Shown in pieces: positions 4,680 through 57,692 of a DNA stretch of 64,000 nt. Both the position numbers and the translations under genes were made by a program. Below the pieces are notes generated by a model, which was given only the letters and a program-made list of their open reading frames with translations, was not told the DNA's origin and made no database searches. Source of the DNA: Mytilus edulis. Taxonomy: Eukaryota. Within the stretch, counting starts at the first letter, position 1. Every line of letters begins with the position of its first letter. The stretch is taken from positions 98,890,001 through 98,954,000 of the forward strand of contig NC_092347.1 in the NCBI RefSeq assembly GCF_963676685.1. The letters are read 5' to 3'.

Positions 4680-4786
4680 TTTGTGGTAATATGTATAATA
4701 CATCATATTTCATTATGAAAAGAACAATATATAAGGGTTCTCGAACCATACATTCAGCACAACACTGTACCATCGCACAAAATCAA
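4680..4786 (+). promoter_or_regulatory. Core promoter and non-coding exon 1 of paralog 1
   Basis: TTGTGGTAA..TGTATAATACATCA block, TATATAA 4728-4734, Inr-like CATTCAG (~4756), donor caa|gtaagt at 4787; block conserved upstream of all five paralogs. Confidence 0.8.
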
Positions 4787-7654
4787 GTAAGTTTCTTTAC
4801 AAAATTAACTATATTCATGATATTGTCTGTTAATTTAACTGCTCCATCGCAATTTATAGTATTCAACTTTTGACGATTTTTTAAGTTGAGAAAATTATGT
4901 CTTTGTCATTTTAGACAATCACACGATATTTGTGTTGTTACTACTATAAGTTTGATAAAATATTTTTGTATCACTAAACAATGCATTAGAAATCAAGAAG
5001 TCAAAGCTTACAGCAGTCAGCAATAAAATATCCACTTTTCTTTGAGATGAAACTTGATATTTAACAGTTCTTTCATTTCTAGATAAAATCAATGTATTTT
5101 AAATGACCTGCTATTTCTATGTCCTTTGTGGTCGTCCTTTTGTGAAATATTCGGCTTTGAGTGTTCCATATGAAGGACAATTCAGAAAAACTCTCTTGAA
5201 GCACAAAATTTGTTAAGTGTTATTTTCATTTCTATCGTGAGTATTATAAAAGTGCAAAATAATATAAATTATCTATAGAAGAACAACATGATACATAGTG
5301 TCAACTAGACCAATTTCTAATAAAAACAATATTATATTAGTAAAGTGAGATCGAAAAGGTAAAACCAAAATAATTGTTTGACAAAAATGAACGTTTTAAG
5401 TAGGTAAAAATTAGTTAAAAAAACGTCAAAGCGATTTATGAAGTTTGGAAAATATGCAGATGAAAACCCCATGATTACCAAAGAAATTATTACACGTGCA
5501 ATTCAGTTATATAAACTACTTCTAAGTATAAAATTATTCGGTTTACAATTTGTCATGAGCTAAATCCACTAGAGTATGAAAAACGCACCAAAAACAGTGA
5601 TATTGCTTCTTTCAAGGTTTTATGCTGTTCTAAAGATGGATATTTTTCAAATGGTGCAATTTTGTCAAAAAAGATGCAAAAGACGCCAGAGTGGAATTAA
5701 ATATTATAAGTAGAAATAAAAACTGACAATACCGTGACAAAAACGAAATGCGACAAAAAGAACGAAACAAAACTGTAAAGAACATTTTATGTGATTTTTT
5801 ATCATTACATAAATCTATTGGCTTGAATAACAATAAATTAAGTTTACTCATTATCAAAGGCTGTAGGGTGACCTGTTATTGTTTATACGTTTGTCTTTTG
5901 GTGCTTGTGAATAGTTTTCCAAATGGTAATTGAACCATAGTTTTATATAAATGTTTATTTAAAGCACATATCGAAAACTATTTTGAATGAAACTTCAATA
6001 TGTTCAATTTGATGTCTTCGACCCAATGACGTTTTGACATTACCATAGTTTGATATATTTATTTAAGGTAAATATCAAATACAATAGTTTTGAGTGAAAT
6101 TTCAATATTATCAATTTAATATCTTCGACCAAATGACTTATCGTTTTGACATTACCTTTCTATAGTGAAACTAACAATACATATCTGTGATTACTGTTAC
6201 CGACACTTGGACCTACTCCTTGAAGTCTGATAAAATACAATAAATTAGAAGGGGGAATTATCTCATGGGCCATACCACTAGTCTGATGTTTACAATTGAA
6301 TTCAGACCATGAGATAAAGGGCTGTGTGTTTTACGTAGAATCACTCTACAGATTAATAATGTAATCACGTAATAAAACATCTGTAGCCTTTCTTTAGCGA
6401 AAACTACAATAAAATCACTGTGAAAATATGATGAAAAAACTTTATGTATGACAACTTTTACTACTGATTGGCACACGAATGAAAGACATTTGTGCAAACG
6501 AAACGGTCAAACTTTACAACACACTATTGTTTTGGGGGTTCTCTTATTAGAGGTTTCTCAACATCTTCCGAACGAACGAAAATTGACCTACCTTGACGTA
6601 ACTTGCCGTAACGAAAAAAGAGGGAGCATTCATTTTGAGTCGTAGACATATTATATTGACTTGATATATATAATATATGTAATTGATCAATAAATTATGG
6701 CGAGGAATATAAAATATTTAGACCCAGGACAGCAATGTGTATGGTTTATATTCGTACAAATTTTAGTATTTATAAAATTATTTTATTTCGGTTTTTTTTC
6801 GTTGAGTTTTAATGGCATGCTGTATATGTTTCTTCGGTTTATATTTTTCTTATTTTTTCTATTTACTGTAGGAATAGAATTTAAAGAAAACGAACCTTTT
6901 AAAAACTATGTAACTATCAGTTTTGTTGGTGCAGTAGCACTCATACTTTCAACAAGAATACACAAAACTCTATTACTTTATGATTGATCGAATGCACCTT
7001 TATATTTCTGTAACTAATTCCAAAAATAATTTAAAGCAAGTCGGACCAATTGGACATTTTTTGTTTGGTGCTTATTTCTAGAAGACATAATTTACCCAAA
7101 CTCACCATCCTTTATTCGATCCATATTTATAAGGGATGTATGGATATTTTAAAAGAAAATACTAAACTTGTGTCATCTAAAAAACTTTTTAATCCTTTTA
7201 CAAACACTAATCTCGTCGGGAAATACTTGTCACAGAACGTTAAACATCTAACAATCAATCAAATGAAATGCAAACCAGACGCCCGATTGTTTTTAACAAC
7301 ATTACAAACTGACATGTTCTTTTTAAATTGATAAGGGAGATAAATCAAACGCATATATTCGACATGTAACCAAACGAAACTCAACGTAAGAATACGTAAC
7401 ATGCAACAGCAGAAAATAAATTGGAACATCGATGTTTAACCACAAAATTAAAATGCAAGGTGGTAAAAAGACTATGCAATTGTTTACCGTTGTCTTTCAA
7501 CACACTACAATATCGCTAAACATTTATTGTGGATTTTATGATCTAAATAACTGCTCCTTAACGCTACGTTCGTAGAGTTTCGTTCGTTCGTAAGATGTTG
7601 ACAAACCTCTATTAAGTACTCTGTAATAAAAAAAAAAATCTTTTCTATTGAAGA

Positions 7655-9340
7655 ATGCAGATCTTAGTCGGTATACTCCTGGTTATTTGTAGCGCAGTCA
7701 GCGCATCCTATAAAGGAGGATATGGCGGTTATGGAGGTGGATACGGAGGATACGGAGGTGGATTCGGTGGTGGGTTCGGAAGAGGATACGGAGGATACGG
7801 AATCGGAGGTGGTTACGGAGGATATGGAATCGGAGGTGGATACGGAGGATATGGAATCGGTGGTGGATACGGAAGATACGGTGGAATCGGAGGTGGATAC
7901 GGTGGCGGATACGGAGGCGGATATGGAAAAGGAAAAGTTGTTGTCGTTAAAGGATATGGTGGTTATGGTGGTTTAGGAGGTGGATATGGTGGTTATGGTG
8001 GATATGGTGGCGGTTATGGTGGACTAGGAGGTGGATATGGTGGTTATGGTGGTTACGGAGGTGGATTAGGTGGTATTGGAGGAGGATATGGTGGTTACGG
8101 TGGTGGATACGGATACGGAAAGGGCAAAGGTAAGATATTGTATACTTTAAATTATCATTTGACAATTACTTAATGTATAGATTGTATAGGTTTTATTCAT
8201 TCATTTGTTTAAAGCCTATACAGGTTTCTGTCAGAATGTCAAAGGATACAATACGCCTTCTTAAAAGGGAATATACATTGCAGCCGTCAAATAGATGACA
8301 TATATAAAAACAATATAAAAGTTTTGTTTTATCCCTATTGATTTCACTTACGTTCTAAGAATCCGTAGGAAGTCAGTATCAAACCACATTAAATATGGTG
8401 TAAATCATCATTTACATGTTCAGGACTAAATTCTTTGTAAAAATATTCAAGGGTTTTGCAAGGGTAAAAAGTGAGACGTTTTAATTCACAAACAAACTGT
8501 AGATTCTTCAGAGTTGAATTATTTCCCTTGTTTAAAATTATCCGAGTTTAATACTATGACGTAAACATAAAGTAAGGTTGACTAGATTATTGAATTATTG
8601 AATTTTTGATATTTTAAACAGATATCATTACAGGTAATCTTCACACTTTGCAAGAAGTGAGGTGACTGACAAAAACATTAGTTTCGTCAAAATAAACAAC
8701 AGAAAGTAAAACTAAGTACGCAAAACTTCGGAAGAAATTAGCCAAGTGAAATGCAAACAGTATTATTTAACTTGAATTTGATTATATGTGATATAGCTTT
8801 ATTGTTAAAAATGAAGATGTATTATCAATGCTTATACCAAGCCATTCGTTTGATGTGTTTGGGCTTTTGATTTTGCATTTGTTGAGGTACTTTCCGTTTG
8901 GAATTTCAATTGTAGGCCGCTTTTATGCGTATATAATAAAAAAAAAAAAGGAAACACAAAAAATGTAAAATATAATTTTGTTTAAAAAGTCTGATTAAGT
9001 ACAAAATCAACAATGCAAAATGATAAGTGTTATTGTGCCATGGTAAATGTTTGTTTATACATTTGTTTTGTCAGTATAATCGAATTTTATGCGATTGTTA
9101 TACAAGTGAGAGGTTTATATAGCTATTAAACCAGGTTGGATCCACCACTTTCTAGTTCCAAGACACGAATATTATAGGTGTTGTCCATTCGTTTGATGTG
9201 TTTGAGCTTTTGGTTACGCCATTTGATTAGTAGGGACTTTCCGTTTTGAATTATCTTCGGAGTTCAGTATGTTAGAGATTTTACTATTTTCGTAAAACCG
9301 ATGTTATAAGATATTTTCATTTTATTTTGCAGGATATTAA
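7655..9340 (+). CDS. Secreted glycine/tyrosine-rich structural protein, paralog 1 (shematrin-like), 160 aa; coding exons 7655-8129 and 9333-9340
   Basis: Signal peptide MQILVGILLVICSAVSA followed by SYKGGYGG and GGYG/GGLG repeats. Acceptor ttgaag|A-ATG; phase-1 donor AAAG|gtaag at 8130; last exon ttttgcag|GA TAT TAA gives ...GKGKGY*; AATAAA at 9395-9400. Same structure in four other paralogs. Confidence 0.9.
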
Positions 9341-10923
9341 ACAGACTCTCATCCAATAGAACTACAAAGGATATTATTTTTTTACATTTATGATAATAAA
9401 ATATAATCATGCATTGCATTTGTGTTGTCGTCTTCTTTCATAAATTTATTATACTGTCTTAGATTCAAGCACCTTCACTCTTGTCGAGATGAATTGTCGT
9501 AAGAAGAAAACGCATTATTATAAAATCAATATTGAGCTAAAATATTTCTCTAGATCATGGAAATTAGTTGGAATTCATCATATATGTAGATAACTGGTAA
9601 CGTATCGTACCTTTAACGAACGCAACCACGACTCTGTTGCACTTTGATGTTTCTGCTGTTTCGTTGTTTACCTTTTATATTTGATTTGTTCCCTCACTTT
9701 TAGTTTGTTACGGTACCCGGATTTGTTTTCTATCAATCAATTTATGATTTTCGAACAGGGGAATACTACTGTTGCCTTTATCAAAGCGTTGTCTGTAGCA
9801 CACCCTATTGATAATATGACACTGATAAACTCTTTACATCCTTTAAATTACAGAATGGAGTAATCCTTTCTCATGATTGCATGTATGCCTTAACACAACT
9901 TTCTCGATTTTTTCGGAGGGTAATTATTAACAAGAGAAAGATGCATTTTAAAAAATCATGAAACGAAAACGACAAGACAATGAATTTAAAACAACGAAGG
10001 ATATATCTTAAAAAGTAAAGTATTTATGTTGACCCCTGATATAAAACCTGATTATATAAAATGTCAATAAAAATAAAATGGCGTACCAAAAAGGCTACTA
10101 ACAACAGAATGTAAAAATATCCTATAATTGATCAAACTGAACAATTACAAAACTCCATGTCCCGTGTCCTGTAAATTCATTTATTATTTATGAAATGTTC
10201 GATTATGTTGAACACTAAGGATTTTCTCCTGTTGAAGTCTACCTTAGCCCTTGTTTTTGGCTGACATTATCTGTCCTTGCGGTCATAAAACTTTCGAGTC
10301 AGTTTTTTTGTACTCATACTCGAAAATCAACCAATGAAATTGCTTGATTTCTTGTTCGAGCATGATTTTTGTGCTCCAAGCACTGAGCAAAGTTTTATGC
10401 CTTCAAGGCCTGGAATAAAGGTTTGTTAAGCTCTTCAGTGTCGTATTTTTTACGGCTTTCCAACTATTCGATGAGTTTTATTAAGACAAAACAGGCGTAG
10501 GGCGTACACATTTATACGCCCGGGTAATACTCGCATGCGTCCAGCACATCTATATCGGACCCAATAATATTTATGGATATTTTCAAACAACACATAAGAA
10601 CTTTTTATATATATTTACATCTAAGGGGGACTCAAGTTGCCGAATTTCCGTTGATAAGCATAAGCTTGCTATATGATGAATTTTACTTTCCGTGATTTTA
10701 TCTCTTTAATGAATAATTCAAATATTGTTGACATGATTTAACAAACTTTAGTAAAATTGTCCGTTTATAAATTTATGAATTCTTAAGAAACTAAAGTTTC
10801 AACTCCCTCAGGCAAAGTTGGCTTTAGATGAATTTGGCTATTTATTTAAGGTATTTTTGACATATAGCTCTTCAACGGTTTCGGCAACTTATACATCTTC
10901 GGATTTCAAATGTTTGGCTTTAA

Positions 10924-13900: not shown

Positions 13901-14790
13901 TTACCTGGCGAAACTGGTTTGTTCAATTTATTTAAAAGTGTAACAGTATCTATCGATATCCAATAAAAACAAATTGTTTATACAAGATGTGTTTTTATCA
14001 ATTAGAAAGGTGTTTGACCGTGAACTTAAAATTGAGCTAATTAAACCCTTTTAAAATACAATAAATGCAGTGTAAGGCAAGATGATGTAAGACCGAACAC
14101 ACATTAAAAACATACAACAAAAATCAAAAACCCTGTAGACGAACCTCGAGTAACTCGACTATATTGACAAATAAGACATATTATGTGAAATATACCGAAA
14201 ATACAGACTTCAAGCCTCATACGAAATAAACAGACAACAACTCAGCAAAGAATAACTTACAGGACCCACATGTATAATGAAGTAGCAACAACATACTAGA
14301 AAACGGGATATATTAATACCAAACTACGTCATGTCCAACAGCGAACATGTAGTTAGTTTAAAAGAACGCTTGGAATTAATTCATGTTGATAAGCAATTCA
14401 AGATCATAAGTACTCGTAATCAATTGCTCTAGACACAAGTGTGATATTTTATAATCACACCAACAGAAACAAAGAAATTAAGTTTCATAAAAAAGGGACG
14501 AAAGATACCAGAGGGACAGTCAAACATAATGGCTGATATTGTCAAGTAGTTAAACCTTCAAATCAAAAGTTTAATTTCAAAACGTTGACTTCATACAGAA
14601 TGAAGCTAATGAAATAACATTATTCGGAAGACATGAAGTTGATTCCACTTCCTTTCTTTAGCAATTATGTTCGAATAATAACCGAAGATTTATGATAGAC
14701 AAATTCAACACAAATTCAAAGCATGGTTATATTTTATGTCAGAAATATAAGAAAGAATATCTTTATCCATTTTTTTGTAGAAATCAGCGT

Positions 14791-16664
14791 TTAATATCCT
14801 GAAAAATAAAAAAAAGATAAATAATATAGTTTAAGACAACATAGGCTTTATTCTTATCATTTTGTGTTGTATTGGCGTTTATGTGTTTATGACAATTTAT
14901 AAATTCAGTGAAATCAACAAAATTCATTATATAAATAGCAGATAATCATTTCGGAGATCTTAAAATATAAGATCTGAATGTTATTGTATCTCTTCTTTAT
15001 TTAATAAATGACATGAAAGTAATTTACGACAAACGAACCGAGGAACATTTTTAAGAAGAAGCCATTATTACAAAAAGGGGAGGTTTCTTGTTTTGGTCTT
15101 TTTTTATGAAGCCCAACAAATATATATCTTTTATTCAAGTATTGATCAAATACCTATGACATGAAGTATAAGCCTACATAATGGTTTGCTCACCACGGGA
15201 GATTTCAATACTGTTAATTTAATACTGAAAATCATTTTAACGATCTGCATGTTCAGATTAGAGTATCAAATGTTATCACATCTATGTAAGTCTTATTTGG
15301 GTAAGTGCATAAATACACGGTCGGCTGATTGTAGTTTCTTCCTCTAATCAGATATTTCGGTATAATCCCTATTCTATTTTTTTCATCCCGAACATATAAT
15401 TTTGTTTTTACTGCAGTTCAGCGTTTCCTTTCATAGATGATGTGCTTTCCTCTATTATATTTTGTACCCGGATTTTTTTACCTCTCAATTTATGACGATT
15501 GAACAGAGATATACTGTACTACTGTTGCCTTTTAAGATAGGTGTTAGGATCTTACATAAATTTTTGTTTGAAAATATTGATTGATATGCTAAACTTGTTC
15601 CTACGTAGATATAACTGATAAACAAATGACAATTACAATAGCTTCTTCTTTCGATGTTTTGATTCGAACTGTGTTTACAAACATCTTAAAGTTCTGTGTT
15701 GTTTGTATTCTTTCTTCTTCGTGTTATTTCATGCGAGTGGTAAGGTTTTTTTAAGGAAGAAGTATACTATGGATTTCTGATAACAACTTTGCATATGTAT
15801 TCTGTAATTTTACTATGAATAAGGCATGCTGTCAATTGTATATAGCAATGTATGCAGAAGTAAGGTAATGGTATGTTAATATCACAACGGTAAATGAACA
15901 CATATATGTAAATCATTAGTTGACCAAAACAAATCCAGTTAAGAAATAAAAGTTTTAAAATTATTTGAGGCAAACATTATCTTACCTTTGCCCTTTCCAT
16001 ATGCATAACTATTCAAACCACCATATCCACCTAGTTTACCACCTAATCCACCTCCGATTCCTCCTAATCCACCTCCGATACCACCAAGTCCACCTCCGAC
16101 ACCTCCAAATCCACCTCCGATACCACCAAATCCACCTCCGATACCACCAATTCCACCTCTGATACCACCGATTCCAACACCGTAACCACCATATCCTTTA
16201 ACGGGTACTTTTACAACAATAGCTTTTTTGTATCCTTTACCGTATCCGCCATATCCACCCCCGAGTCCACCTCCGAATCCGCCACCAAGTCCAACTAATC
16301 CTCCTCCGTATCCACCCCCGATTCCATATCCTCCGTATCCACCACCGATTCCGTATCCTCCGTATCCACCTCCGATTCCGTATCCACCACCGTATCCACC
16401 ATATCCTCCTCCATATCCACCTTTACCGTATCCACCATATCCTCCTCCATATCCACCTTTACCGTATCCACCAACTCCAATACCCCACAATCCCCCTCCT
16501 AATCCTCCTCCTAATCCACCTCCTAATCCACCTCCTAATCCTCCTCCTAATCCTCCTAATCCTCTTAATCCTCCACCGTATCCTCCGTATCCGCCATATC
16601 CTCCTTTATAGGATGCGCTGACTGCGCTAACGATAACCAGGAGTATACCAGCTAAGATCTGCAT
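14791..16664 (-). CDS. Secreted glycine/tyrosine-rich structural protein, paralog 2, 228 aa; coding exons 16664-15986 and 14798-14791
   Basis: Signal peptide MQILAGILLVIVSAVSA; GGLG, GGYGI and GGIGG blocks; KKAIVVKVPVKG motif. Donor AAAG|gtaag at 15985; last exon ttttcag|GA TAT TAA. Confidence 0.88.
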
Positions 16665-18207
16665 TCTAAATAAATAATACTTATCTATATGAAACCCTGT
16701 TTAGATATTAACAATATAAAGGTACCTTACAGTTAAAGCTGTAGCGGTAAGAACATTGTTAACAGCTTTAGTATAATGAATCTATATTCAAGTGTTAAAA
16801 AAAGATCTGCATTCTGCAATAGCCCAGATATCTATAAATTAATGATATTTATAAAGAGAATTTTAAAGAATTTCGAAACTCATATAAATGAAGTAAAATT
16901 TGATTAAAATTAAATGTTTATAATGTATATGCAAATATAGGCACCACTAGCATGCCGCTGTTCAAAGGTCATCAATCGATTAAGAGAACAAAAAAAAAAT
17001 CCGAGTTACAAACTAAAACTTGGGGAAACACATCAAATATAAGGGGAAAACAACGAAACAACAGAAACACTGAAGTGCAAAAAAAACAAACAAAGGACAA
17101 TGCAATATACTTAGAAACAAAATATAAGATAACAACTGCAATATTCCTGACTTGGCACAGGACAAATCCGATGATCTTTACCAAAAAAAACATTAAAAGT
17201 AAAATTGATCGCTAATATTATGCACTTATGTTTAAAAAAAAAAAGACCACAGAGGATTAATGATATCACAGTTATTGTTCAATACGACACGCATACAATC
17301 CTCTTTCTAATTTTTGTAAATTAAATTGTAAAAATTCAACTTAATATATAGACCCCAGATAATTTTACCAATCTTAAATATTTACATAACATGTTTATGT
17401 TCTCAATTTTATTTTATAAATGATTTTTATCAGACTTCGTCGGATACTCCCAGGGTCGGTAAAAATGTCAACAGATATGTTTTGTTTGTTGAAATTATTT
17501 CAAGTCACAAAGACATTTTCAAACGATAAATATGAATGACGTTATGTCATTCAATTCAATCACGGTTGAGAGGGTTTTTTTTATTGAAGTTTGCCTACAA
17601 CTTTTTAAAATTTTATTTAGAAATGATTAGACAATTTTTGTCACTTGTATTATTTCAAACTTCATACATTAACCATGTTAACTAAACTTGTTCTCTAAAA
17701 AAATATCACTTCTTGCAAATACCTTTATTTTAATTGTTCAATCAATTTCATCTCACTTTTGATAATGAAATCATAAGAATGTTAGATATTAACATGGTAG
17801 ATTTTTTAAACTATTGATAATACACTTTCCGTTGCCATTTCTAGGACTTATCAAAATCGTTAAAAAAATTCGTTACATCAGTTTTCATCTAGAGATAAGA
17901 AAAGACACGTTCAACTTTAAATAATTTTGAAAAACACTGCCAGTTCATTTTCTTTGTCGACAAAGCGGGCTTTAGCCCAGCTACATGCCTGCATTCGAAG
18001 AAGTAGTTTAAAAGAGGGACGAAAGATACCAGAGGGACAGTCAAACTAATAAATCGAAAATAAACTGACAAAGAATGGCAATCTTAAAAGAGAAGATTAG
18101 AATGGTATATAGTCTTGATTTCATTAACGATTAATAGGTTCTTTGACTACTAATGTTTACTAATTTTTTGGTATTTCAAAAGATGTGCAGTATTTACTTC
18201 TACGAGA

Positions 18208-18297: not shown

Positions 18298-18502
18298 ATG
18301 GATGCTTTCCCTTCATAATTGATTTTGCATCTTATCGAAATACTTTTTGTTTAAAATTTGCAACACTATTATCTGGTCAACTGTCTATAACTAGAAACGT
18401 AAAATGTTCTCAATCTAAAACAATCGACAAAAAGTTAAAAACTTAGATGGAAAAGTTACACAGAATAGAAGTTAATCTAACAGTGACCATATAATGACTT
18501 AC

Positions 18503-18620
18503 CTGATTTGATACGGTGGTTCAGTTATGTGCTGAATGTACTTGCTATTGGTTCTAGACGTCTTATATATATTGCTCATTTCATAATACAATTTGATGTA
18601 TTATACATTTTACCACAAAT
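18503..18620 (-). promoter_or_regulatory. Core promoter and non-coding exon 1 of paralog 2
   Basis: Reverse-strand TTGTGGTAA block, TATATAA 18569-18563, TACATTCAGC, donor cag|gtaagt at 18502. Confidence 0.8.
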
Positions 18621-18917
18621 TAATCAACATTAATTATGCATTTTTCTGCTGAAAATTATTTAATACGTCCGCTTTATCAAATTATAGGTTTTAATGTAAA
18701 AAATAATAATTCTACATTTTTTATGTGTTTTTCTAATCACAGATTGGCTAATGTTGCACTTTTTTAATTGTTTTTGTTAGCAAAAATAAAAGACGTTTAC
18801 ATCAACATACGATTTTTAATATCCACTTCATATGAATTTCTAAATCATACACAATTGTTAAAAAGTGGACCTATAAATTAACCATAATATTAATTCCCCA
18901 AAAAAGAAAGTGCCTAA

Positions 18918-20945: not shown

Positions 20946-22484
20946 GTAGCTAAGAGGATGCTGTCCACTATTCACCTTTACTTTGAAATATACGAATACT
21001 ATGTACTAGAATTATAATTGACATATCGACTGAACTATGTCATAATAAAAAAAATATATTCGGATCTTCGGTCACTTTTTTCAATTCATATGAACGCCCA
21101 AAAATGATTTCAACTCAATAAAATTAAGAATGGGAATAAGGACTATGTCAAAGAAAAAACAACCCGACCAATTAGCAGAAACCAGCCGAAGGCCATTGGT
21201 GTATTCATGATCATCATTTATCAAGATTAAGTCGTTAGGTAATTGATCAAGTAACTTAAATCTTATCTCATCTCTACAAAATTCAACACATGTCCGACAT
21301 GTATACATCTTGTGAGAGGCTTCTTTATTACGTTGTTCCTTAAGCGGTTAAATGGATCATTAAATACGGAAGTCTTATTAGTGGGTTAAGGACAAACATT
21401 TACCTGATCCCTAAAATGAAACAACAAAATAAGAGAAAAAGACTGAACAAAAAACTAAAAGACAGGGCAATGTGTAACACATCAATCTCAGTGATGTATA
21501 CTTTACTCTATCAATATTTCCTTATTTCATTAACAACCAGAAGTCCAGAAGTGAGATTGGAGTAAACTGCAGTAAAATTGTTTCAAGTTACGAAAACGAC
21601 TGATCAGTTTTACGCTTTGAATTCTATATACGTAAACTACATGTAGGTGTACTGTTCCTTCAAAACAATTAATTTATTCAGTATAACATTAAGTTAAAAT
21701 GTTCAGGACGAATCTTCGAAAGTCATCGATATGGGTCATAACTCTTTTACATTTAAATGTCGTCCGACTTAAGAATATCGATAAGACTCATCAGTGATTT
21801 TCGTATTCTCTCTATCGGGTTACATTTGTTGATCAGGACTTCTACACTACCCTACTGCTGATCAAATGGATTCAAGACGTTAAAAATATTAACCTTTTAA
21901 ATATTTATCCATATGTTTGTGTATTTATAATAATAATTTTACAAGCATTTTATTTGGTAGTATGGTTGAACGTGTTAATAAATCATTACAGATGAGACAA
22001 GGAAGCTATTAAACCAAGAGTTCATACAAATAATTCAAAGAACACCAATAAATAAATTACAACAACTCTCAAACAAACCTTAAATATACTACACCAGGAT
22101 GATTTTATCAAATAATAAAGTAGGAGAATGCCACCAAAATTGTAAGGTTGAAGTCTCCTTCAATAAACTTTTTATGTTTTACAAACATTTGACTTTCAAT
22201 TTTCAAGTTAAGGCAAAACCAGATAAAAACCCAGGATGCAACAAATATTTAATTACCACATTTATAAAATGCTAAGTCATTTAATTTTTTGTCATAAAAG
22301 TTATTGGAAAGTTAAGATTTTTATTGATAATTTTTTGTTGTTGTAAAAAGTGCAACATTTGCCAATCTGTGGTTTAAAAACATTCATCAAAAATGCAAAA
22401 TGATTGCTTATTACATTAGAAAACAAGTGTTTGTTTTAAATAATTTTAAGCATAAAAAAAATTGCATAATTAATGTTGATTAAT

Positions 22485-22601
22485 TCGTGGTAATATGTAC
22501 AATGATACATCAAATTGTATTATGAAATTAGCAATATATAAGGCTTCTAGAACCAACAGTAAGTACATTCAGCAAAATACTGAGCCACCGTACAAAAACA
22601 G
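22485..22601 (+). promoter_or_regulatory. Core promoter and non-coding exon 1 of paralog 3
   Basis: GTGGTAA block, TATATAA 22535-22541, TACATTCAGC, donor cag|gtaagt at 22602. Confidence 0.8.
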
Positions 22602-23439
22602 GTAAGTTTCTATATTGTCAGTGTAAATTTAAGTTCTATTGTATTAACCATTCCATCTAGATTTTATATTTTTGTCGATTTTAAAGATGGAGTATACATT
22701 TGCCATTCAGAACATTTAAACATTTGTCACGAAGATAGCGTTGCAATTGAAAATCTAAAAAAAATATTTCCTTGTCGCCAAAAGATTGATAAATTGAAAA
22801 CATGCATTCTTCAGTCGTTAAAGATAATTTTTTATTGAAAGTAAATGTGGCACATCTTTTATTGATACCAAAAAGCAAATAAATTATAAGTAGTTTACGA
22901 ACCAATTATCCTTTCATTTTCAAAGATAATATACAATTTTAATCTTTCAAAAAGCAGTACTTCTTGGAATGTTTCTGGGCTAAATTCCATTTCTTTTGAC
23001 AAGGAACATGAAGTGGTAGAATTATTTATAGTTAAACATGTCATTTTATCTCTAGAATTAATCTGATGTAAAAATAATTTAAATGATTTTTTTGAGTTCT
23101 ACAAATAGTTTTTCATTATCGAAAATGAGATGAAATAGGGGGAAATTAAATAAAAAATTTCATATGGCTTTTTCACTTTATATTATCAGTATATACCTGA
23201 ATCACCATTATAATCTAAAAAAAAATTCTATCTGACAAATTATATTTGCTGATTTCTGATGCGGTACGAGATAGTAGAAAAACATATACATTGTGTATCA
23301 TTTAACTTAACTTTATACCTCCGACAAATGTTGTCACATGATATGATACAGATTACGTTTTTCTAAAATTCATTGCAACAGTGATTAAGTTAGATGTCTT
23401 ACATATAAGGGGTTTTATATAGTCTTTGTTACTGTGACT

Positions 23440-23795: not shown

Positions 23796-24182
23796 ACATC
23801 AATATCGTCACGAAAGGCTGACACAGGATGATTTCAATTGATTGTTATAACCAGGTACATGATTATTAGGTTTTCATATGTATATCAAAATCAAAATCAT
23901 TCTAAATCTAGACAGTATTCAGCAAAAGTGTTACTGCATAAATTTAGTATTATTAAGAAACGAAATTTCAATATATCAGTTTCTATTGTTTGACCAATTA
24001 CTGTAATTTCTGCCATCGTTTTGATCCTTATTTATCTAGCTATAGAGAAAACACAAACAATAAAAAACATTTATCATTTTTACCAATCCTGCCAATCATA
24101 GTCAAACTTAACTTCCGGCTTTTGTATTCGAGATTCTCTTATTAAGTACTCTGAAACTAAGAAATTTCTTCTCTATTGCAGA

Positions 24183-36169: not shown

Positions 36170-36278
36170 TTTGTGGTAACATGTATAATACATCATATTT
36201 TTTTTTATAAAACGAACAATATATAAGGCTTTTAGAACCATACATTCAGCACAACACTGGACCATCGCACCCTATCAA
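36170..36278 (+). promoter_or_regulatory. Core promoter and non-coding exon 1 of paralog 4
   Basis: TTGTGGTAA block, TATATAA 36220-36226, CATTCAGCACAACACTGG, donor caa|gtaagt at 36279. Confidence 0.8.
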
Positions 36279-39299: not shown

Positions 39300-40376
39300 A
39301 TGCAAATCTCAGTTGGTATTCTTTTGGCTATCTTTGGCGCAGTCAGCGCATCCTATAAAGGAGGATATGGCGGTTACGGAGGTGGATACGGAGGATACGG
39401 TGGTGGACTGGGAGGATTAGGAGGTGGATTAGGAGGTGGATTAGGAGGAGGATTAGGAGGAGGATTGTGGGGTATTGGAGTTGGAGGATATGGTAAAGGA
39501 GGATATGGTGGATACGGCGGATATGGAATCGGAGGTGGATACGGAGGATACGGAATCGGAGGTGGATACGGAGGTTACGGAATCGGAGGTGGATACGGAG
39601 GATATGGCATCGGAGGTGGATATGGTGGATATGGAATCGGAGGTGGATATGGTGGAATTGGTGGTGGATACGGAGGATATGGAAAAGCCGTTGTTGTGAA
39701 AGTACCAGTATCTGTAGGATATGGCGGTTATGGTGGTATCGGAGGTGGATTCGGTGGTGTCGGTGGTGGATTCGGTGGAATCGGAGGTGGATTAGGTGGT
39801 ATCGGAGGTGGATTAGGTGGTATCGGAGGTGGAATTGGTGGTGGATATGGTGGTTTGAACAGTTATGCATACGGAAAGGGAAAAGGTAAGATAATGTCTG
39901 CTTTAAAAAAAAAAATTCTGACTAAATTTTATGGATCAACGGATGGTTCACATTATTAATTGGTTTAAATACATATTAAATATTGACGTATCATTTGCTA
40001 ACTTCTGCATAGATTGTTGAACATTGCAATATTGATGACATGTCTTATTCAGAGGGAAATACTTGATTAAATTGTTGTCAGTTTCATACATACATTCGTG
40101 TTATTACAGCAGTCGTTGTTAGAATTTCACATGATGACATTTCTGCCGAAAATGGGAGCCGTTATATTTAAAAAAAAATACTTTGATTCATTAAACATTA
40201 TATCAAACTTTTGTTTTCTCAAGAAAAAAATATTTCCTCTTCTAATTTTCTATTGTCTTAGATTGATTTAACTGAATAATGAATTTGACATAAATACGAA
40301 ACTTCAAACCATTATATGAACTCCATAAAGCCAATGCTATGCAATTAAATATATTTTTTGTTTTGCAGGATATTAA
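39300..40376 (+). CDS. Secreted glycine/tyrosine-rich structural protein, paralog 4, 197 aa; coding exons 39300-39885 and 40369-40376
   Basis: Acceptor tattacag|A-ATG; signal peptide MQISVGILLAIFGAVSA; donor AAAG|gtaag at 39886; last exon ttttgcag|GA TAT TAA; AATAAA at 40434-40439. Confidence 0.9.
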
Positions 40377-43300
40377 ACACAGATTACCAAGCTAAACGGA
40401 CGAAGAATGATGAACTTTTTTTTACATTTTTGAAATAAAATGTAAATATTGTATTGAATTTGTGTTGACTTTTTCTATTATAAATCTAATGTCACTGCAT
40501 AAACTGAAACACGAGGTAGACGCATGTCTAATTGAATTGTTATAAGGAAAAAACTCTCAGATCAAAATATTCATGACCTCAATTAGTTGTTTTCCATTTC
40601 ATGTAAATAAACTCATCATAGGTAGACAAATGAAGATATAGTATGAGCGCTAACGAGACAAATCTTGATCCAAGTCACAATTTGCAAAAGTAAACCATTT
40701 TAGGCCAAAGTACGTCGTCAACACCGAGCCTTGGCTCACAACAAACAGCGAGCAATTAAGGTCACCAATAATGTCTAGACTTAATAAGTGTAAAATTAGC
40801 GGTCTAATATATTTTTTTTTTTATAAAAAGACGGGAAACACTTATGGGATATATGATGAATGTATTATGAAAAATGACTTCATATATTTAGGCGGTATGA
40901 TAAAAAGAAAATCATACCGCTTATTAACTCAACTTTGATTTGAAGGTCTATTTTTTATCAGCATTAATCACAACCAAATGTATTTAAAAAACGTAGTAAA
41001 AAATATCATATTCGTGTCTCGGCAGCAAATGTGTTATGATTAAGTCATTGGTGTACTTTAAAATAAAAATAAAATAATTTAAAGCAATTCCTTTGGTACA
41101 GTTCATAGGTGAAAATAAGTACACGTGGTATGATTGATTGCCAATGAGACAACTATCAACCAAAGTTCAAATGAAGTCGATATAAACAGATATAGACAAC
41201 CGTACGACCTTCAACAATCAGAAAAAACGCATACCCTATTGTCGGCTATAAAAGGCCCCGACATGAAAAATAAGAAACAATTCAATTAATAAAACTAATG
41301 ATCTTACTTACAACAAGCCAGCAACAAACACTTAATTTCATAAACATGTATAAAGTTTAAATAATACATTAACAGGATTTTTCAATATTCACAAACAGCT
41401 ATTTTTTGTGAAAAAAACTAATAACACTTTGGGAAATATGGTTTGTTCGAAGTACTTTCTTAAATTCCGTTTATCAGGAACGATTATCTATCTAATGTCA
41501 ACTTTACACAAAGAATACGATCAAACAATAACAAACACCACATATTGTTTTATGTTCTGTGTACAATCTAATTAAATATCTTTCGAAACTTATATCAATA
41601 AGAATGTGTGATAAGAGTGCCAATGGGCCATTTCCATCCAACTTGAGACTAGAATACTAATGAATACTAACAAAATAACACTACAAACGAAACATGGAAA
41701 TGTAAAGACAAAACGAAAGGCCTTCGGAAATATAAATCACCTCACATTATCAGCGATAAATGAGTAAATGAATAAGACAAACAAATGTAATCTCAAAGAT
41801 AAAATTGTGAATGGAAATGGGGATTATGTCAATGAGACAAGAACCTGTCCAAACAGGAGATAACAGTTGAAGGCTACCATTAGGCCTTTAACGCAGCGAG
41901 AAAATCCCGCACACGAAGATAGGCATCAGATGGCCCCTAGATAAAATGAATGTGTAATAGTTCAGTGAAAATGAACGTCATACATAACTTCAATATATAT
42001 ATATTAACTTAAATTAAAAAAAAGACGAACAAAGGTCAGATAATCATAACCTAGGACAGGGGCAAAGATGCAGCGGGGTTTAACATGTTTTGTGAGATTT
42101 CAACTGTTCCCTAAAACCTCTAGCCAATGTAGAATAAAGAAACGCATACGCTCAGTAACAATCAGTTTAAAAGAAGTCCGAGTCCGATATTAGAATAGGT
42201 ATCAAAGAAACTGAAAAAAATATCTGATTTGTTTCCGGAATTAAAAGAGATTGATAATATGAATATTTAGGAAGGTAGGGCGTCCACTAAAATGTTTAAC
42301 CCCGCAACAATCTGTATGTGCCTGTGTAAGGTCGGTAGCATGTGATTCAGTGTTTGTCGTTTGTTTCTGTGTTACATATTTTTTTTTCGTTCATTGTATG
42401 GTAAATAAATTAGGTCGTTGATTAGTTGTTCTCGTTTGAATTGATTACATTGGTAATTACGGGGCCTTTTATAGCCGAGTTTGCATTGCTCATGTTTGAC
42501 GGCCATACGTTGAACCTTTGTTGTTCATGACTGCATCATTTGGTGTCTTGTGAAGAGCTGTCTCGTTGGTAATCATACCACGTCATCTTGTCTTTTTATA
42601 TAATTATGGGTCAAACGTAAAAGCTTATATTTTTGGCGGTCATCAAACATACCTGAATAATATTTTAGTACGCAAAATTTTCGGTTCGTCAACACATGAA
42701 AAATTAAGAATCATTAACGACACTAATGTAACTGCACTAAATGCTTATTCAGACAAATAAAGTAAATAAAATGGCTTACTTTTTCAAAATTGTTATTTGG
42801 ATAGAGAGTTGTCTCATTGGCACTCACACCACATCTTCCTATATCTAAATAAAGTGAAAAGTCAAAAACAAAATGTAAACATTGTGACAAACTGATAAAA
42901 ACTAACAAAAAAGAAGAAAAAAAAATCCAAATTATACAAAAATGAAAACAATACTGAACTTGTAACGGTTCAGAAATGCTATAACTGCAACTTTCAAACC
43001 ATATGCATGCCAGTACTGGCTTCTTTGTCGGTGACACTTTCAAGAAAGTATAATGATTTTAAAATACAGTTTATTTGTTTACGCCAAATGTGTTCTATTC
43101 AAAATCCGTGGAGAAAACACTTTAATCCACCAAAAACAGATACTAACTAATTGGCAGTATTTACATTAACAGTAACCATGTTGCTGCACTATATATCTTT
43201 CTGTTCATACGACATTCTATGACTTGTATATTCTTTCATGATTTCAACAAATAACGGCAGATATGTTCCATTGTCAAAACCGCAAATGTAGAGCAGAATC

Positions 43301-51987: not shown

Positions 51988-52247
51988 CTAAATCTCTAAT
52001 ATAACATTTGATGGTGCAGCAGACAGAGATAGAACGTACATATTAGGTAACAGGTGGCATATATTATTGTTATCATTATCGGATTCGATCCGCCAGTTGT
52101 AATGCTGACACAGATTTTTCATAACGCGCAAAATATGAAAGTGTTTGACTTTCAAACATTTATGAATTATGAAAAAAAATTTACACTAAAAACCCGTATT
52201 TTGATCAAGTGTTATCAGCATAAAATTGCATAAATTATTTTGATGAA

Positions 52248-52354
52248 TTTGTGGTAACATGTATAATACATCATATTTTATTATGAAACGAACAATATAT
52301 AAGGCTTCAAAAACCATACATTCAGCACAACACTGGACCATCGCACCATATCAA
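52248..52354 (+). promoter_or_regulatory. Core promoter and non-coding exon 1 of paralog 5
   Basis: TTGTGGTAA block, TATATAA 52296-52302, CATTCAGCACAACACTGG, donor caa|gtaagt at 52355. Confidence 0.8.
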
Positions 52355-52656
52355 GTAAGTGTCTTAACAAGTCAAGTCTGTGGAATTGTTAGAATAAGTG
52401 TAGAAAACCAATTCTTCCATTTCCAACTATGAACAACTTTTAACCTTTCGTCGATTCTGAAAGAGAAAATATTTTGTGTTTGTCGTTCTAGATGTTTTGA
52501 TCGATGCAGGTGTTGCATTGGCAATAATTTACACAATATACTAGCTTATTGCTAAACGATGCAAAAGGAATAAATGAGTCGATACATGCTGTCGTCGGTG
52601 ACGTCGAACAAATGTCCCTTTTCCATTGACACATTTCTCATCTGATATTAATGCTA

Positions 52657-55250: not shown

Positions 55251-56011
55251 AAGTAAGAGTTGCAGTATAAAGAGAACGATTCTAAGTGATATCGAAATTA
55301 AAACATTTTTTTTTTTAGTAAACACGGAATATTTCAAGATTTTGTATAATTCTTTTTTGAATATATAGCAATTTCCTTAGTACTTTGCGATGACTGAAAT
55401 TCAAGTGAGCGTTTGGACTTTTTTTTATCTTTCTAGCTATAATTAAAACAACAAAATCTTTTACCATTTATTGGACTTAAAATGTAGTTGTATATATAAC
55501 AAGATTAAAGGGTTTTTCAAAATTACCAAAATTGACAGTTATCCCATTAAATATGAAGAAACATATATATCTTAAAAGTGCTGTAATATCCTAGAACTGA
55601 AAAAAGTTTTGAAGTTTTTCCCTTGCAGTAAATTCAATCATTTGACTTGATCAAACTAAAATGACCGTTTCAGACTGAATTCTTGCTTCTAGTGTAATCT
55701 AGTGGCGCGTATCTTTAATCTTCTGTTCAAATTCTATAAATTCACAACATGAGATACAAGATTGTATGTTTTACGTAGAAAATTAGTATATTCAAGTACA
55801 CAAAGTCTTTAAAAGGATTGAAGTTGTGACCATAAAATAGTATTTACGATTATTTTTACTCGTATAATTTTTTTAAAGAGCTACTGATCACCACATGCAC
55901 GATCAAATTTTGAAAAATGACAAAACTTAACTTCAGAATGGTATATAAAAAAAACTGAAACAAGCTCCAATTAAATAATCCATAACTTATATATTTCTTG
56001 ACTATTACAGA

Positions 56012-57076
56012 ATGCAATTCTCAGTTGGTATTCTCTTGGCTATCTTTGGCGCAGTCAGCGCATCCTATAAAGGAGGATATGGCGGATACGGAGGTGGATA
56101 CGGAGGATACGGTGGCGGATTAGGAGGGGGATTAGGTGGAGGATTAGGAGGAGGATTAGGAGGAGGATTGTGGGGTATTGGAGTTGGTGGATACGGCAAA
56201 GGAGGATATGGTGGATACGGCGGATATGGAATCGGAGGTGGATACGGAGGATACGGAATCGGAGGTGGATACGGAGGATACGGAATAGGTGGTGGATACG
56301 GAGGATATGGAATCGGAGGTGGATACGGAGGATATGGAATCGGAGGTGGATATGGTGGATATGGAATCGGAGGTGGATATGGTGGAATCGGTGGTGGATA
56401 TGGAAAAGCCGTTGTTGTTAAAGTACCAGTATCTGTAGGATATGGCGGTTATGGTGGTATCGGAGGTGGATTCGGTGGTGTCGGTGGTGGATTCGGTGGA
56501 ATCGGAGGTGGATTAGGTGGTATCGGAGGTGGAATTGGTGGTGGATATGGTGGTTTGAACAGCTATTCATATGGAAAGGGAAAAGGTAAGATAATTTCTA
56601 CTTTAAATGATTGTTTTATCATTATTTTTCTGACTGGAATTTATTGATCAACGAATTGTTTACATTCCTTAATTTGTTTGAATACATGTTAAATATCATT
56701 CGCTAACGTCTGCCTAGATTGTTTTACATGGCAAAATTGATGACATGCCTTATCCAGGGGAAATACTTGATTAAATTGTTGTCAGTGTCATACATACATT
56801 CGTGTAATTACAGCAAAAAGATTGTGCAAGTTTTTTTTTAAAGAATTCCACATGATATATTTCTTTTAAAAAGGAAAACGTTATATCTAAAATACTCTGA
56901 TTCATAACACCTAATTTCAAACATTGTTTCTCGAAAAAAAACTAATATTTTCTCTTCTAATTTTATATTGTTTTAGATTAATTTAACTGAATAATGAATT
57001 TGAATAAATACGAAAACTACAAATTATTAGCCAATGGTATGCTATAACATTTATATTTTGTTTTGCAGGGTATTAA
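56012..57076 (+). CDS. Secreted glycine/tyrosine-rich structural protein, paralog 5, 193 aa; coding exons 56012-56585 and 57069-57076
   Basis: Acceptor tattacag|A-ATG; signal peptide MQFSVGILLAIFGAVSA; donor AAAG|gtaag at 56586; last exon ttttgcag|GG TAT TAA (synonymous Gly); AATAAA at 57132-57137. Confidence 0.9.
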
Positions 57077-57692
57077 ACGCAGATTACCAACCTAAACGGA
57101 TAAACAATGATAAACTTTTTTACATTTTTGGAATAAAATGTAATTGCTGTAGGGATTTTGTGTTGACTTTTTCTATCATAGATTTAATGTCACTGCACCA
57201 ACTGAACATGTTGAAGTCATGAACCAGTAATAAACACTGAACTTCTTAATCCTGTATATAGTTTAATACATAAACAGGATTATCCTAATTAACAGCTCAT
57301 CTTCACAAACAGCTCAATTCTGTTAAAATACATAATATAACACTTTGGAGTGTCTATGAGACAACTCTCCTTCCTAGTCAATAAAATGTAAAAAAAAAAT
57401 AACAGTTATTATTCAAAGTAAAAACACAGAGCCTTGGCTCACACCGAACAGCAAGATATCAAGGGCACACAAATTACTATTTAAAAACACTTTAAACAGG
57501 AAAACCAACGGTCTTCTCTATATAAAAACAAGATAAGAGAAACACCTATAAACAACACCTTCAAACGACAACTGTTGAACAACAGGCTCAGACAGGTTCA
57601 GATATATCCGGATGTTTCTTTTGTGGAAGATAAAATAAACTGTCGCTGCTACATGCTTTTATTCACATAAAAGGTTCCAATTGGCATGGTAG

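What the first reader, a model, noticed from the sequence alone, without database searches (positions are those of the whole stretch)
4680..57140. Five-gene cluster of secreted GGYG/GGLG proteins with a fixed K/Y-rich head and tail
Seen: five intact paralogs with a signal peptide, an invariant predicted mature N-terminus SYKGGYGG, modular Gly blocks (GGLG, LWGIGVGG in four of five, GGYGI, GGIGG), a central Lys/Val beta-prone motif (K..VVKVPV; KVVVVK in gene 1) and a C-terminal GKGKGY. Known: pearl-oyster shematrins are secreted Gly-rich shell proteins ending in a basic motif plus Tyr, and mussels use Tyr to DOPA and Lys for quinone cross-linking. Inference: a co-regulated, possibly uncharacterised family of sclerotised structural proteins (periostracum, shell matrix or byssus) with cross-linkable ends and a variable elastomeric middle.
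Basis: partly seen in the sequence, partly recalled or inferred. Interest (0 to 1): 0.8.

Follow-up and report, generated by a model that had tools for sequence, protein, structure and literature searches.

The report
Mussel Gly/Tyr-rich mantle protein cluster
A mussel (Mytilus) chromosome carries a tandem cluster of expressed genes for small, secreted, basic proteins made of about 60% glycine and 12-21% tyrosine; they are most likely building blocks of the tanned shell skin (periostracum) or the outer shell framework, and two copies fit the never-sequenced 1979 protein "periostracin".

Summary
All five genes are intact. They share a signal peptide, the invariant start SYKGGYGG, modular Gly blocks, one Val/Lys-rich island and the ending ...GKGKGY, whose last Gly-Tyr-stop sits on a tiny third exon. 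Transcript contigs from two species confirm that splice for gene 3.

The family is larger than reported. Nine tandem genes span about 97 kb, four of them just upstream of the window. Three more diverged copies lie 7.8 Mb away on the same chromosome.

The mature proteins are 10-18.5 kDa, 58-65% Gly and 12-24% Tyr. They have essentially no acidic residues, a pI around 9-9.7, and are predicted disordered. Expression is very high in some RNA runs and absent in others.

The motif GYGIGGGYGGY occurs 19 times in the 1.37 Gb genome, always in this cluster. A 2014 M. edulis mantle transcriptome reported the same repeat in a "shematrin-like" isotig. The family is therefore mantle-expressed and was seen before, but never characterised.

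Genes 2 and 3 (18.2-18.5 kDa, 60% Gly, 12% Tyr) match periostracin (20 kDa, basic, 55% Gly, 10% Tyr plus 2.2% DOPA). This link is an untested hypothesis.

I rate it a new member of a known kind. The scan has not reported this family on other DNA.

The parts
4605..4792 (+). Gene 1 promoter block and non-coding exon 1. TATA box 4728-4735; exon about 4758-4786 (start site inferred); donor GT at 4787.
   Evidence: Conserved among all five genes. The 23-mer GTGGTAAnATGTATAATACATCA is found exactly only in this cluster.
7654..8129 (+). Gene 1 exon 2. Acceptor CAG|A, ATG at 7655, 158 codons plus 1 base, phase-1 donor.
9333..9445 (+). Gene 1 exon 3. GA-TAT-TAA completes Gly-Tyr-stop; 3' UTR with AATAAA at 9395. 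The 3' end is not mapped.
18497..18680 (-). Gene 2 promoter block and non-coding exon 1. TATA box 18569-18562; donor GT at 18502.
15986..16665 (-). Gene 2 exon 2. ATG at 16664, 226 codons plus 1 base.
14686..14798 (-). Gene 2 exon 3. Gly-Tyr-stop plus the conserved start of the 3' UTR; the 3' end is not mapped.
22410..22607 (+). Gene 3 promoter block and non-coding exon 1. TATA box 22535-22542; donor GT at 22602. Lies head-to-head with gene 2.
   Evidence: No read coverage of this short exon.
24182..24876 (+). Gene 3 exon 2. ATG at 24183, 231 codons plus 1 base.
   Evidence: Very high contig depth in runs X1 and X2.
25710..26190 (+). Gene 3 exon 3. Gly-Tyr-stop plus 3' UTR; AATAAA at 25889 and 26161. 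One contig runs on to about 26390.
   Evidence: Splice 24876 to 25710 is seen in contigs of X2 and X1. Sequence.
36093..36284 (+). Gene 4 promoter block and non-coding exon 1. TATA box 36220-36227; donor GT at 36279.
39299..39885 (+). Gene 4 exon 2. ATG at 39300, 195 codons plus 1 base.
40369..40554 (+). Gene 4 exon 3. Gly-Tyr-stop plus 3' UTR; the 3' end is not mapped.
52212..52360 (+). Gene 5 promoter block and non-coding exon 1. TATA box 52296-52303; donor GT at 52355.
56011..56585 (+). Gene 5 exon 2. ATG at 56012, 191 codons plus 1 base.
57069..57206 (+). Gene 5 exon 3. Here GG-TAT-TAA gives Gly-Tyr-stop, followed by 3' UTR; the 3' end is not mapped.

Best explanation
These are genes of a Mytilus-lineage family of mantle-secreted structural proteins with repetitive low-complexity sequence ("shematrin-like").

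How each gene is built and what it makes:
- A TATA promoter with a family-specific upstream module drives a three-exon transcript.
- The product loses an 18-residue signal peptide.
- What remains is a basic, acid-free, intrinsically disordered chain of GGY, GGL and GGI modules.
- It has a fixed head (SYKGGYGG), one short Val/Lys strand-like island in the middle, and a fixed Lys/Tyr tail (YGKGKGY).

Most likely mechanism (inferred):
- The proteins are secreted at the mantle edge as soluble precursors.
- Tyrosinase converts part of their many tyrosines to DOPA.
- They are then cross-linked, through DOPA-quinone and Lys or Tyr adducts, into an insoluble sheet.
- That sheet is most probably the periostracum. 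The larger isoforms (genes 2 and 3) would correspond to periostracin.
- The Gly modules would give flexibility. The Val-rich island could seed chain-to-chain association.

Plainly seen in the sequence and the data: tandem duplication and expansion or contraction of repeat units generate isoforms of different length and Tyr density.
For: Anatomy and conservation:
- Gene anatomy.
- Family of nine tandem genes plus three distant copies.
- Spliced transcripts at very high depth in two runs (two organism labels) and next to nothing in two other runs, so expression is strong and restricted.

Mantle expression:
- GYGIGGGYGGY, back-translated, hits the 1.37 Gb genome 19 times. All hits are in this cluster and the reversed control gives 0.
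- Freer et al. describe (GGGYGGYGI)n, n = 2-4, in isotig 17419 of a dissected M. edulis mantle transcriptome (PMC3896809).

Protein properties:
- Composition is 58-65% Gly and 12-24% Tyr. Eleven of twelve members have no Asp or Glu, and one 91 Mb copy has a single Asp. pI is 8.9-9.7.
- Genes 2 and 3 give mature proteins of 18.2-18.5 kDa with 60% Gly and 12.1-12.4% Tyr.
- Periostracin is reported as basic, water-insoluble, 20 kDa, 55% Gly, 10% Tyr plus 2.2% DOPA, and unsequenced as of 2013 (PMC3821031).
- AlphaFold predicts only the signal helix. The rest is below pLDDT 50.
- Gly codons are 94% GGA or GGT.

Indirect support for periostracum over mineral layers:
- Shell proteomics removes the periostracum with bleach and abrasion. 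The M. edulis shell proteome paper never mentions shematrin (PMC5854119).
- Perna viridis has no calcitic layer. Its mantle still expresses a shematrin-like unigene at FPKM 7066, and that unigene is not in its shell proteome table (PMC6641155).
Against: - The tissue of the expressing runs is hidden, so mantle expression rests on a motif quoted in a paper, not on an alignment to the isotig.
- No localisation within the mantle is available, and no protein-level evidence.
- Gly content is 5 points above the published periostracin value, and the mass is 1.5-2 kDa lower.
- Other Gly/Tyr-rich secreted gene families exist in this genome and could equally be periostracin. Examples are C4:90.80 Mb (57% Gly, 14% Tyr) and C4:5.86 Mb.
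- Pinctada shematrins have a similar make-up but lie in the prismatic layer (PMC3191542).
- DOPA formation, cross-linking and any role of the Val island are inferred only.
Confidence: 0.55

Rival explanations
1. The proteins are framework proteins of the mineralised outer (calcitic fibrous-prismatic) shell layer. They would work like Pinctada shematrins: secreted by the outer mantle epithelium and laid between or around crystals, rather than in the periostracum.
For: - The architecture matches the published description of shematrins: signal peptide, GnY repeats followed by a hydrophobic residue, basic charge, and a basic tail ending in Tyr.
- Pinctada shematrins map to the outer epithelium that makes prisms.
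- The M. edulis isotig with this family's motif was labelled shematrin-like.
Against: - No shematrin-like protein is mentioned in the bleach-cleaned M. edulis shell proteome paper.
- P. viridis has no calcitic layer, yet its mantle expresses a shematrin-like unigene very highly, and that unigene is absent from its shell proteome table.
- Specialists regard true shematrins as restricted to pearl oysters.
- Such Gly-rich, cross-linked proteins are poorly seen by tryptic proteomics, so their absence from proteomes is weak evidence.
Confidence: 0.25
2. The proteins are byssal thread or plaque components made by the foot glands, used as a Gly/Tyr-rich matrix between collagens.
For: - Mussel byssus uses Tyr/DOPA and Lys chemistry.
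- Other Gly/Tyr(/Asn)-rich secreted genes lie on the same chromosome at 90.80-90.82 Mb. From memory, these resemble byssal thread matrix proteins. That is a lead, not tested here.
Against: - The family-specific motif was reported from dissected mantle, not foot.
- The proteins have almost no Asn, Pro or His, and none of the domains I recall as typical of byssal proteins (from memory).
- Run X24 expresses another Gly/Pro-rich transcript but not gene 3.
Confidence: 0.08
3. The proteins are non-structural secreted Gly-rich peptides, for example mucosal or antimicrobial glycine-rich proteins of gill or haemocytes.
For: - Cationic Gly-rich peptides with antimicrobial roles are reviewed for marine invertebrates (titles listed).
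Against: - At 10-18 kDa with 12-24% Tyr, a nine-gene array and silk-like codon bias, the family fits a bulk material better.
- The evidence for mantle origin stands.
- The primers published for the gill protein encode non-Gly sequence unlike this family.
Confidence: 0.04

Closest known systems
Periostracin of Mytilus edulis (Waite, Saleuddin and Andersen 1979), as described in PMC3821031
   Same: Same genus. Basic, about 20 kDa against 18.2-18.5 kDa for genes 2 and 3. 55% Gly against 60%. Tyr plus DOPA 12.2% against Tyr 12.1-12.4%. It is the soluble precursor of a tanned sheet.
   Different: Periostracin is known only as a purified protein with a composition and has no sequence, so identity cannot be tested here. 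Gly is 5 points lower than in genes 2 and 3. The other seven cluster members are smaller (12.7-15.4 kDa) and richer in Tyr (14-21%).
Shematrins of pearl oysters (Pinctada; Yano et al. 2006)
   Same: Secreted, basic, Gly-rich proteins with GnY or XGnX repeats and a basic C-terminus ending in Tyr. They form a multigene family that varies by gain and loss of motifs and is very highly expressed in mantle.
   Different: The tail here is GKGKGY, not RKKKY, RRKKY, RRRKY or PRKKY. The invariant SYKGGYGG head and the central VVKVPV/KVVVVK island are not described for shematrins. Authors regard shematrins as restricted to pearl oysters. Homology cannot be established for such low-complexity sequence. 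Location in the prismatic layer is unproven here.
Shematrin-like mantle proteins of other bivalves (Dreissena polymorpha, Perna viridis, M. edulis isotig 17419)
   Same: [quoted passage not shown] The M. edulis isotig carries the very repeat, (GGGYGGYGI)n, that is unique to this cluster in the genome.
   Different: Those reports are transcript-level notes. They give no gene structure, family definition or function. The Dreissena proteins cannot be aligned even to Pinctada shematrins.
Lysine-rich matrix proteins (KRMPs) of Pinctada
   Same: Small, secreted and basic, with a Gly/Tyr domain thought to cross-link and a short basic tail ending in Tyr.
   Different: KRMPs have a Lys/Trp-rich basic domain directly after the signal peptide. 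Here only one Lys follows the signal peptide and the Gly/Tyr part makes up almost the whole protein.

Membership tests
Shematrin (Pinctada) | Signal peptide and secretion | tested here: met
   There is a hydrophobic N-terminus with AVSA|S, which fits the -3/-1 rule. It is predicted as the only helix. No dedicated signal-peptide predictor was available.
Shematrin (Pinctada) | Gly-rich repeat domains, GnY/XGnX with hydrophobic X | tested here: met
   Runs of GGYGG, GGGL, GGIGGGF and (GGGYGGYGI)n are present, with 58-65% Gly.
Shematrin (Pinctada) | C-terminal signature RKKKY, RRKKY, RRRKY, IRRKK or PRKKY (as listed in PMC3896809) | tested here: not met
   The tail is YGKGKGY. It is basic and ends in Tyr, but the Lys residues alternate with Gly and there is no Arg.
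Shematrin (Pinctada) | Detectable sequence homology to Pinctada shematrins | not tested
Word searches came back blank. A profile search of 1.84 billion proteins found one family fragment and two weak Gly-rich hits.
Shematrin (Pinctada) | Protein present in the prismatic shell layer | not testable with these tools
   This needs shell-layer proteomics or immunolocalisation.
Periostracin (M. edulis) | Mass about 20 kDa | tested here: met
   Mature products of genes 2 and 3 are 18.2 and 18.5 kDa. The other paralogs are 10.4-15.4 kDa.
Periostracin (M. edulis) | Basic protein | tested here: met
   pI is about 9.6-9.7, with no Asp or Glu and 5-6% Lys plus Arg.
Periostracin (M. edulis) | 55% Gly, 10% Tyr and 2.2% DOPA | tested here: inconclusive
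   Genes 2 and 3 have 60.0% Gly and 12.1-12.4% Tyr, which equals the published Tyr plus DOPA of 12.2%. Gly is 5 points high.
Periostracin (M. edulis) | Made by mantle and extracted from forming periostracum; contains DOPA | not testable with these tools
   Mantle transcripts are inferred from the genome-unique motif. Presence in periostracum and DOPA need biochemistry.
KRMP (Pinctada) | Lys/Trp-rich basic domain directly after the signal peptide | tested here: not met
   The mature N-terminus is SYKGGYGGYGG, with a single Lys.

The most novel reading that the evidence does not exclude
Genes 2 and 3 of this cluster, and possibly the whole nine-gene array as isoforms, encode periostracin. Periostracin is the DOPA-containing precursor of mussel periostracum purified in 1979, and its sequence was still unreported in 2013. 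If so, the fixed SYKGGYGG head, the Val-rich island and the GKGKGY tail would be the first sequence-level handles on how a molluscan periostracum assembles and tans.
Probability: 0.35. Interest if true: 0.7.

Novelty: new member of a known kind. Interest (0 to 1): 0.5.

Why it matters
The periostracum is the template on which bivalve shell is laid, and it protects the shell against dissolution. In the open literature I could search, its main protein in the best-studied mussel has no sequence. A defined gene family with a plausible match to periostracin makes this testable by in situ hybridisation, targeted mass spectrometry, and recombinant protein with tyrosinase. The cluster is also a clean example of how repeat-unit gain and loss plus tandem duplication produce isoforms of a biomaterial protein, while the head, tail, promoter and intron positions stay fixed. 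If the proteins instead belong to the calcitic layer, they would be the mytilid counterpart of shematrins.

Tried and rejected
Database and tool attempts that gave nothing:
- Pfam scan of two paralogs: no family.
- Word-indexed protein search with whole gene 3 and with residues 1-40 of gene 1: no hit even at E <= 1. The candidate lists were probably swamped by Gly-rich words, so these blanks say little.
- Profile search of 1.84 billion representatives: one real relative only. It is a mis-modelled M. galloprovincialis protein, VDH91888.1, "hypothetical", 86% identical over 113 residues to an upstream paralog. There were also two unrelated Gly-rich hits.
- BLASTP masks these sequences, so I aligned them without masking.
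- The protein atlas could not read new sequence.
- AlphaFold2 on the family alignment gave only the signal helix, so no fold search was run.

Literature attempts:
- Full-text search for five peptide strings of the family found no paper.
- The McDougall 2013 shematrin paper is not held.
- Supplements of Freer et al. are not held, so isotig 17419 could not be aligned.

Limits of the read data:
- Tissue labels of the sequencing runs are coded, so the runs show expression but not where.
Full report
**What is there**

The window is AT-rich (about 32% GC). It holds five long Gly-rich ORFs at 7655, 16664 (minus strand), 24183, 39300 and 56012. A self-comparison showed that each coding block comes with two further conserved blocks:
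- One lies 1.6-3.7 kb upstream: 4605-4822, 18680-18497, 22410-22614, 36093-36311 and 52212-52370.
- One lies 0.8-1.2 kb downstream: about 9320-9445, 14813-14686, 25702-25822, 40356-40554 and 57061-57180.

The upstream blocks contain an invariant TATATAAG. About 50-60 bases further on there is an invariant GTAAGT donor. This is a promoter plus a short non-coding first exon.

Directly before each ATG lies a conserved acceptor, TCTATTnCAG|A-ATG. Each coding exon ends in AAAG|GTAAG in phase 1. The downstream block begins with a pyrimidine tract and CAG|GATATTAA (GGTATTAA in gene 5). This completes Gly-Tyr-stop.

- The signal peptide ends AVSA or AVNA.
- The mature start is SYKGGYGG.
- LWGIGVGG is present in genes 2-5 only.
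- The central island is KVVVVK in gene 1 and VVKVPV in the others.

**Transcription**

One search for public runs found runs that hold about a tenth of the sampled words of a 10 kb stretch. That is roughly the exon share.

I laid four runs on gene 3:
- Contigs of X2 (the window's organism label) and X1 (a second label) cross from 24876 to 25710 with GT..AG ends.
- Summed contig depth on exon 2 is very high, up to about 18,000 in X2 and 274,000 in X1.
- X3 and the raw-read run X24 have next to nothing on the exons.

The gene is therefore spliced as modelled at intron 2, strongly expressed, and restricted to some samples.

The contigs continue 240-440 bases beyond 25950. The 3' UTR is therefore several hundred bases long, with AATAAA at 25889 and 26161.

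The short first exon had no coverage, so intron 1 rests on conservation alone. Run labels are coded, so the tissue cannot be read from this result.

**Size of the family**

The window is contig 4, 98,890,001-98,954,000, of a 1.37 Gb assembly. Six-frame searches of that assembly found two further sets of copies:
- Four gene-1-like copies lie just upstream, at 98,849,934, 98,858,820, 98,873,625 and 98,886,151. All are on the plus strand, carry KVVIVK, and have the same donor and the same third exon.
- Three nearly identical, more diverged copies lie at 91.05-91.10 Mb. They have signal peptide MKIAICLFLAICSAVSA, the same SYKGGYGG head, the island QVFVVR and the tail ...GGSKKG, with the same phase-1 donor.

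No further copy lies in the 10 kb fetched on either side of the array. The cluster is thus nine genes in about 97 kb. Gene 2 is inverted head-to-head against gene 3.

In an alignment of 11 members, the signal peptide's end, S-Y-K-G-G-Y-G, one Val of the central island, and the final Lys are invariant. The repeat blocks differ by whole units. Unit counts are 1-14 for GGGL and 2-6 for GGYGGYGI.

A 23-base promoter element, GTGGTAAnATGTATAATACATCA, occurs exactly at five genes of the cluster. Elsewhere in the genome it has only two 2-mismatch hits.

**Properties of the proteins**

After removal of 18 residues and addition of the two residues from exon 3:
- The products are 10.4-18.5 kDa, 58-65% Gly, 12-24% Tyr and 3-5% Lys.
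- Eleven of twelve have no Asp or Glu, and one 91 Mb copy has a single Asp. pI is 8.9-9.7.
- Gly codons are 94% GGA or GGT.

Pfam finds nothing. AlphaFold2 with the family alignment predicts only the signal helix, and everything else is below pLDDT 50. These are low-complexity, probably disordered chains with one short hydrophobic island.

**Organism and relatives**

Earlier notes of this scan call the genome a mussel. I checked this as follows.

The profile search of 1.84 billion representative proteins returned one true relative, VDH91888.1. It is annotated "hypothetical predicted protein, partial" from Mytilus galloprovincialis. An unmasked alignment shows 86% identity over 113 residues to one upstream paralog, embedded in a mis-modelled 338-residue protein.

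Both word-indexed searches were blank. Paralogs score E = 1e-35 to 1e-62 with the same scoring engine. The likely reason for the blanks is that correct models of these genes are missing from that collection, or that Gly-rich words swamped the candidate list. The blanks are not evidence that the family is absent outside Mytilus.

**Tissue**

Freer et al. sequenced dissected M. edulis mantle. They reported that isotig 17419, their best "shematrin-like" transcript, carries the motif (GGGYGGYGI)n with n = 2-4 (PMC3896809).

I back-translated the unit junction GYGIGGGYGGY and searched the whole genome. It gave 19 hits and none for the reversed control. All 19 lie in seven genes of this cluster. The published isotig must therefore come from this family, so the family is expressed in mantle.

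This is the best tissue evidence I could obtain. It rests on a motif quoted in the text, because the paper's supplements are not held.

**What it most likely is**

The literature describes periostracin, purified from forming periostracum of M. edulis in 1979. It is a basic, water-insoluble, 20 kDa protein with 55% Gly, 10% Tyr and 2.2% DOPA. Tyrosinase-type chemistry cross-links it. As of 2013 its sequence had not been determined (PMC3821031).

Genes 2 and 3 give basic proteins of 18.2 and 18.5 kDa with 60% Gly and 12.1-12.4% Tyr. That Tyr figure equals the published Tyr plus DOPA.

Two indirect points favour periostracum over the mineral layers:
- Shell proteomics strips the periostracum with bleach and abrasion, and the M. 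edulis shell proteome paper does not mention shematrin at all (PMC5854119).
- Perna viridis is a mytilid whose shell has only nacre and myostracum. It expresses a shematrin-like mantle unigene at FPKM 7066, and that unigene is absent from its shell proteome table (PMC6641155). Whether that unigene belongs to this family is untested.

A search of six "periostracum protein" phrases found six open-access papers. None is a Mytilus periostracum proteome.

My preferred reading is therefore this. The genes encode mantle-edge-secreted precursors. Their tyrosines are partly hydroxylated and oxidised. The proteins are then tanned into the periostracum, and genes 2 and 3 are the best candidates for periostracin itself.

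Which steps have direct support and which are inferred:
- Directly supported: the gene models (intron 1 by conservation only), expression, composition, family structure, and the mantle link through the motif.
- Inferred: hydroxylation, cross-linking, the flexible role of the Gly modules, and any assembly role of the Val-rich island.

**Why I do not go further**

The genome holds other secreted Gly/Tyr-rich families:
- Two genes of about 290 codons lie at C4:90.80 and 90.82 Mb. They have 57% Gly, 14% Tyr, many Asn, Val-rich islands, and a KK tail at a GTAAG donor.
- A small gene at C4:5.86 Mb starts its mature protein with (T)YYKGGYGKGYGG.
- Arg- and acid-containing Gly/Tyr exons lie at C2:16.62-16.64 Mb.

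Any of these could be periostracin instead. From memory only, the 90.8 Mb genes resemble byssal thread matrix proteins, which keeps a small byssal rival alive.

Pinctada shematrins have a similar make-up but are expressed by the prism-forming outer epithelium (PMC3191542). A role in the calcitic layer is therefore the main rival.

**Comparison with known families**

By architecture the family is shematrin-like: signal peptide, GnY and XGnX repeats, basic charge, a basic tail ending in Tyr, and multigene motif shuffling. However:
- The literal shematrin tail signatures (RKKKY and variants) are not present.
- The invariant head and the central island are not part of the shematrin description.
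- Specialists treat shematrins as restricted to pearl oysters (PMC5400390).
- Dreissena "shematrin-like" proteins cannot even be aligned to Pinctada ones (PMC9210306).

[quoted passage not shown] I do not file it as a shematrin. It is not a KRMP either, because the Lys/Trp-rich domain is missing.

**Tools and limits**

- The protein atlas could not read new sequence.

**Verdict**

- Observation: confirmed and extended.
- Interpretation: partly supported.
- Novelty: new member of a known kind, noticed earlier at transcript level.
- Interest: moderate, 0.5. It would rise to about 0.7 if the periostracin identity holds, which I put at about 0.35.

Noticed in passing
G000:C4:98849934, 98858820, 98873625, 98886151 (3.9 to 40 kb upstream of the window; loci L009-L012): Four more intact gene-1-like paralogs (KVVIVK island, same donor, same Gly-Tyr-stop exon) make the array nine genes long.
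   Followed up: yes
G000:C4:91048019, 91071119, 91101771 (loci L015, L016, L018): Three nearly identical, more diverged family members of 131 codons. They share the SYKGGYGG head and have island QVFVVR and tail GGSKKG. A loose end in run X2 reads like their QVFVVRGG island, which suggests co-expression. Their last exon was not located.
   Followed up: partly
G000:C4:90803001-90807000 and 90823001-90827000 (L027, L028): Two genes of about 290 codons for secreted Gly/Tyr/Asn-rich proteins (57% Gly, 14% Tyr). They have repeated GGYGGYGGGNGGG units, Val-rich islands (AIIVGG, VILVG) and a KK tail at a GTAAG donor. From memory they resemble byssal thread matrix proteins. Not tested.
   Followed up: no
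G000:C4:5860001-5864000 (L031): A small secreted Gly/Tyr protein whose open frame (signal peptide included) is about 120 residues. Its mature start is (T)YYKGGYGKGYGG and its tail GKGYGK sits at a donor. It may be a distant relative of the family.
   Followed up: no
window 23334-23837 (intron 1 of gene 3): A dispersed repeat is covered at high depth in all four runs, including those that do not express gene 3.
   Followed up: partly
window 36905-37185 and 37258-37705 (intron 1 of gene 4): Two stretches match their own reverse complement at 78% and 84%. These are long palindromic, hairpin-forming inverted repeats, possibly a foldback or MITE-like insertion.
   Followed up: no
window 53679-54325 (intron 1 of gene 5): A 327-base unit is duplicated in tandem at 96% identity.
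   Followed up: no
window 59554-59874 (-): An open exon encodes the C-terminal part of a C-type lectin domain (Pfam PF00059, E = 1e-10). It is the next gene beyond the cluster.
   Followed up: partly
window 57944-58345 and 59208-59510: Two copies of a minisatellite, 76-79% alike, read as CDPGVNMCDPGV-type repeats in one frame. They flank the region before the lectin exon.
   Followed up: no
L026:7605 (G000:C4 about 98961605, 7.6 kb beyond the window): A short open frame is rich in Gly, Arg and Trp (GGWGGGFRGG repeats). It may be an exon of yet another secreted low-complexity family.
   Followed up: no
window 4680-4710, 18594-18616, 36173-36195, 52251-52273: The conserved promoter module contains TGTGGT and the palindrome ATGTAT-A-ATACAT, next to GATTAATT. 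From memory, TGTGGT is a Runx-type core and GATTAATT a homeodomain-type core. These are candidate binding sites for the factors that drive the family. Not tested.
   Followed up: partly
run X24 on window 24783-24845: Raw RNA reads match only a short Gly-coding stretch and then run on as CCCGGAGGAATTGGAGGTGGACCAGGAGGA (PGGIGGGPGG). A different Gly/Pro-rich gene is therefore expressed in that sample.
   Followed up: no
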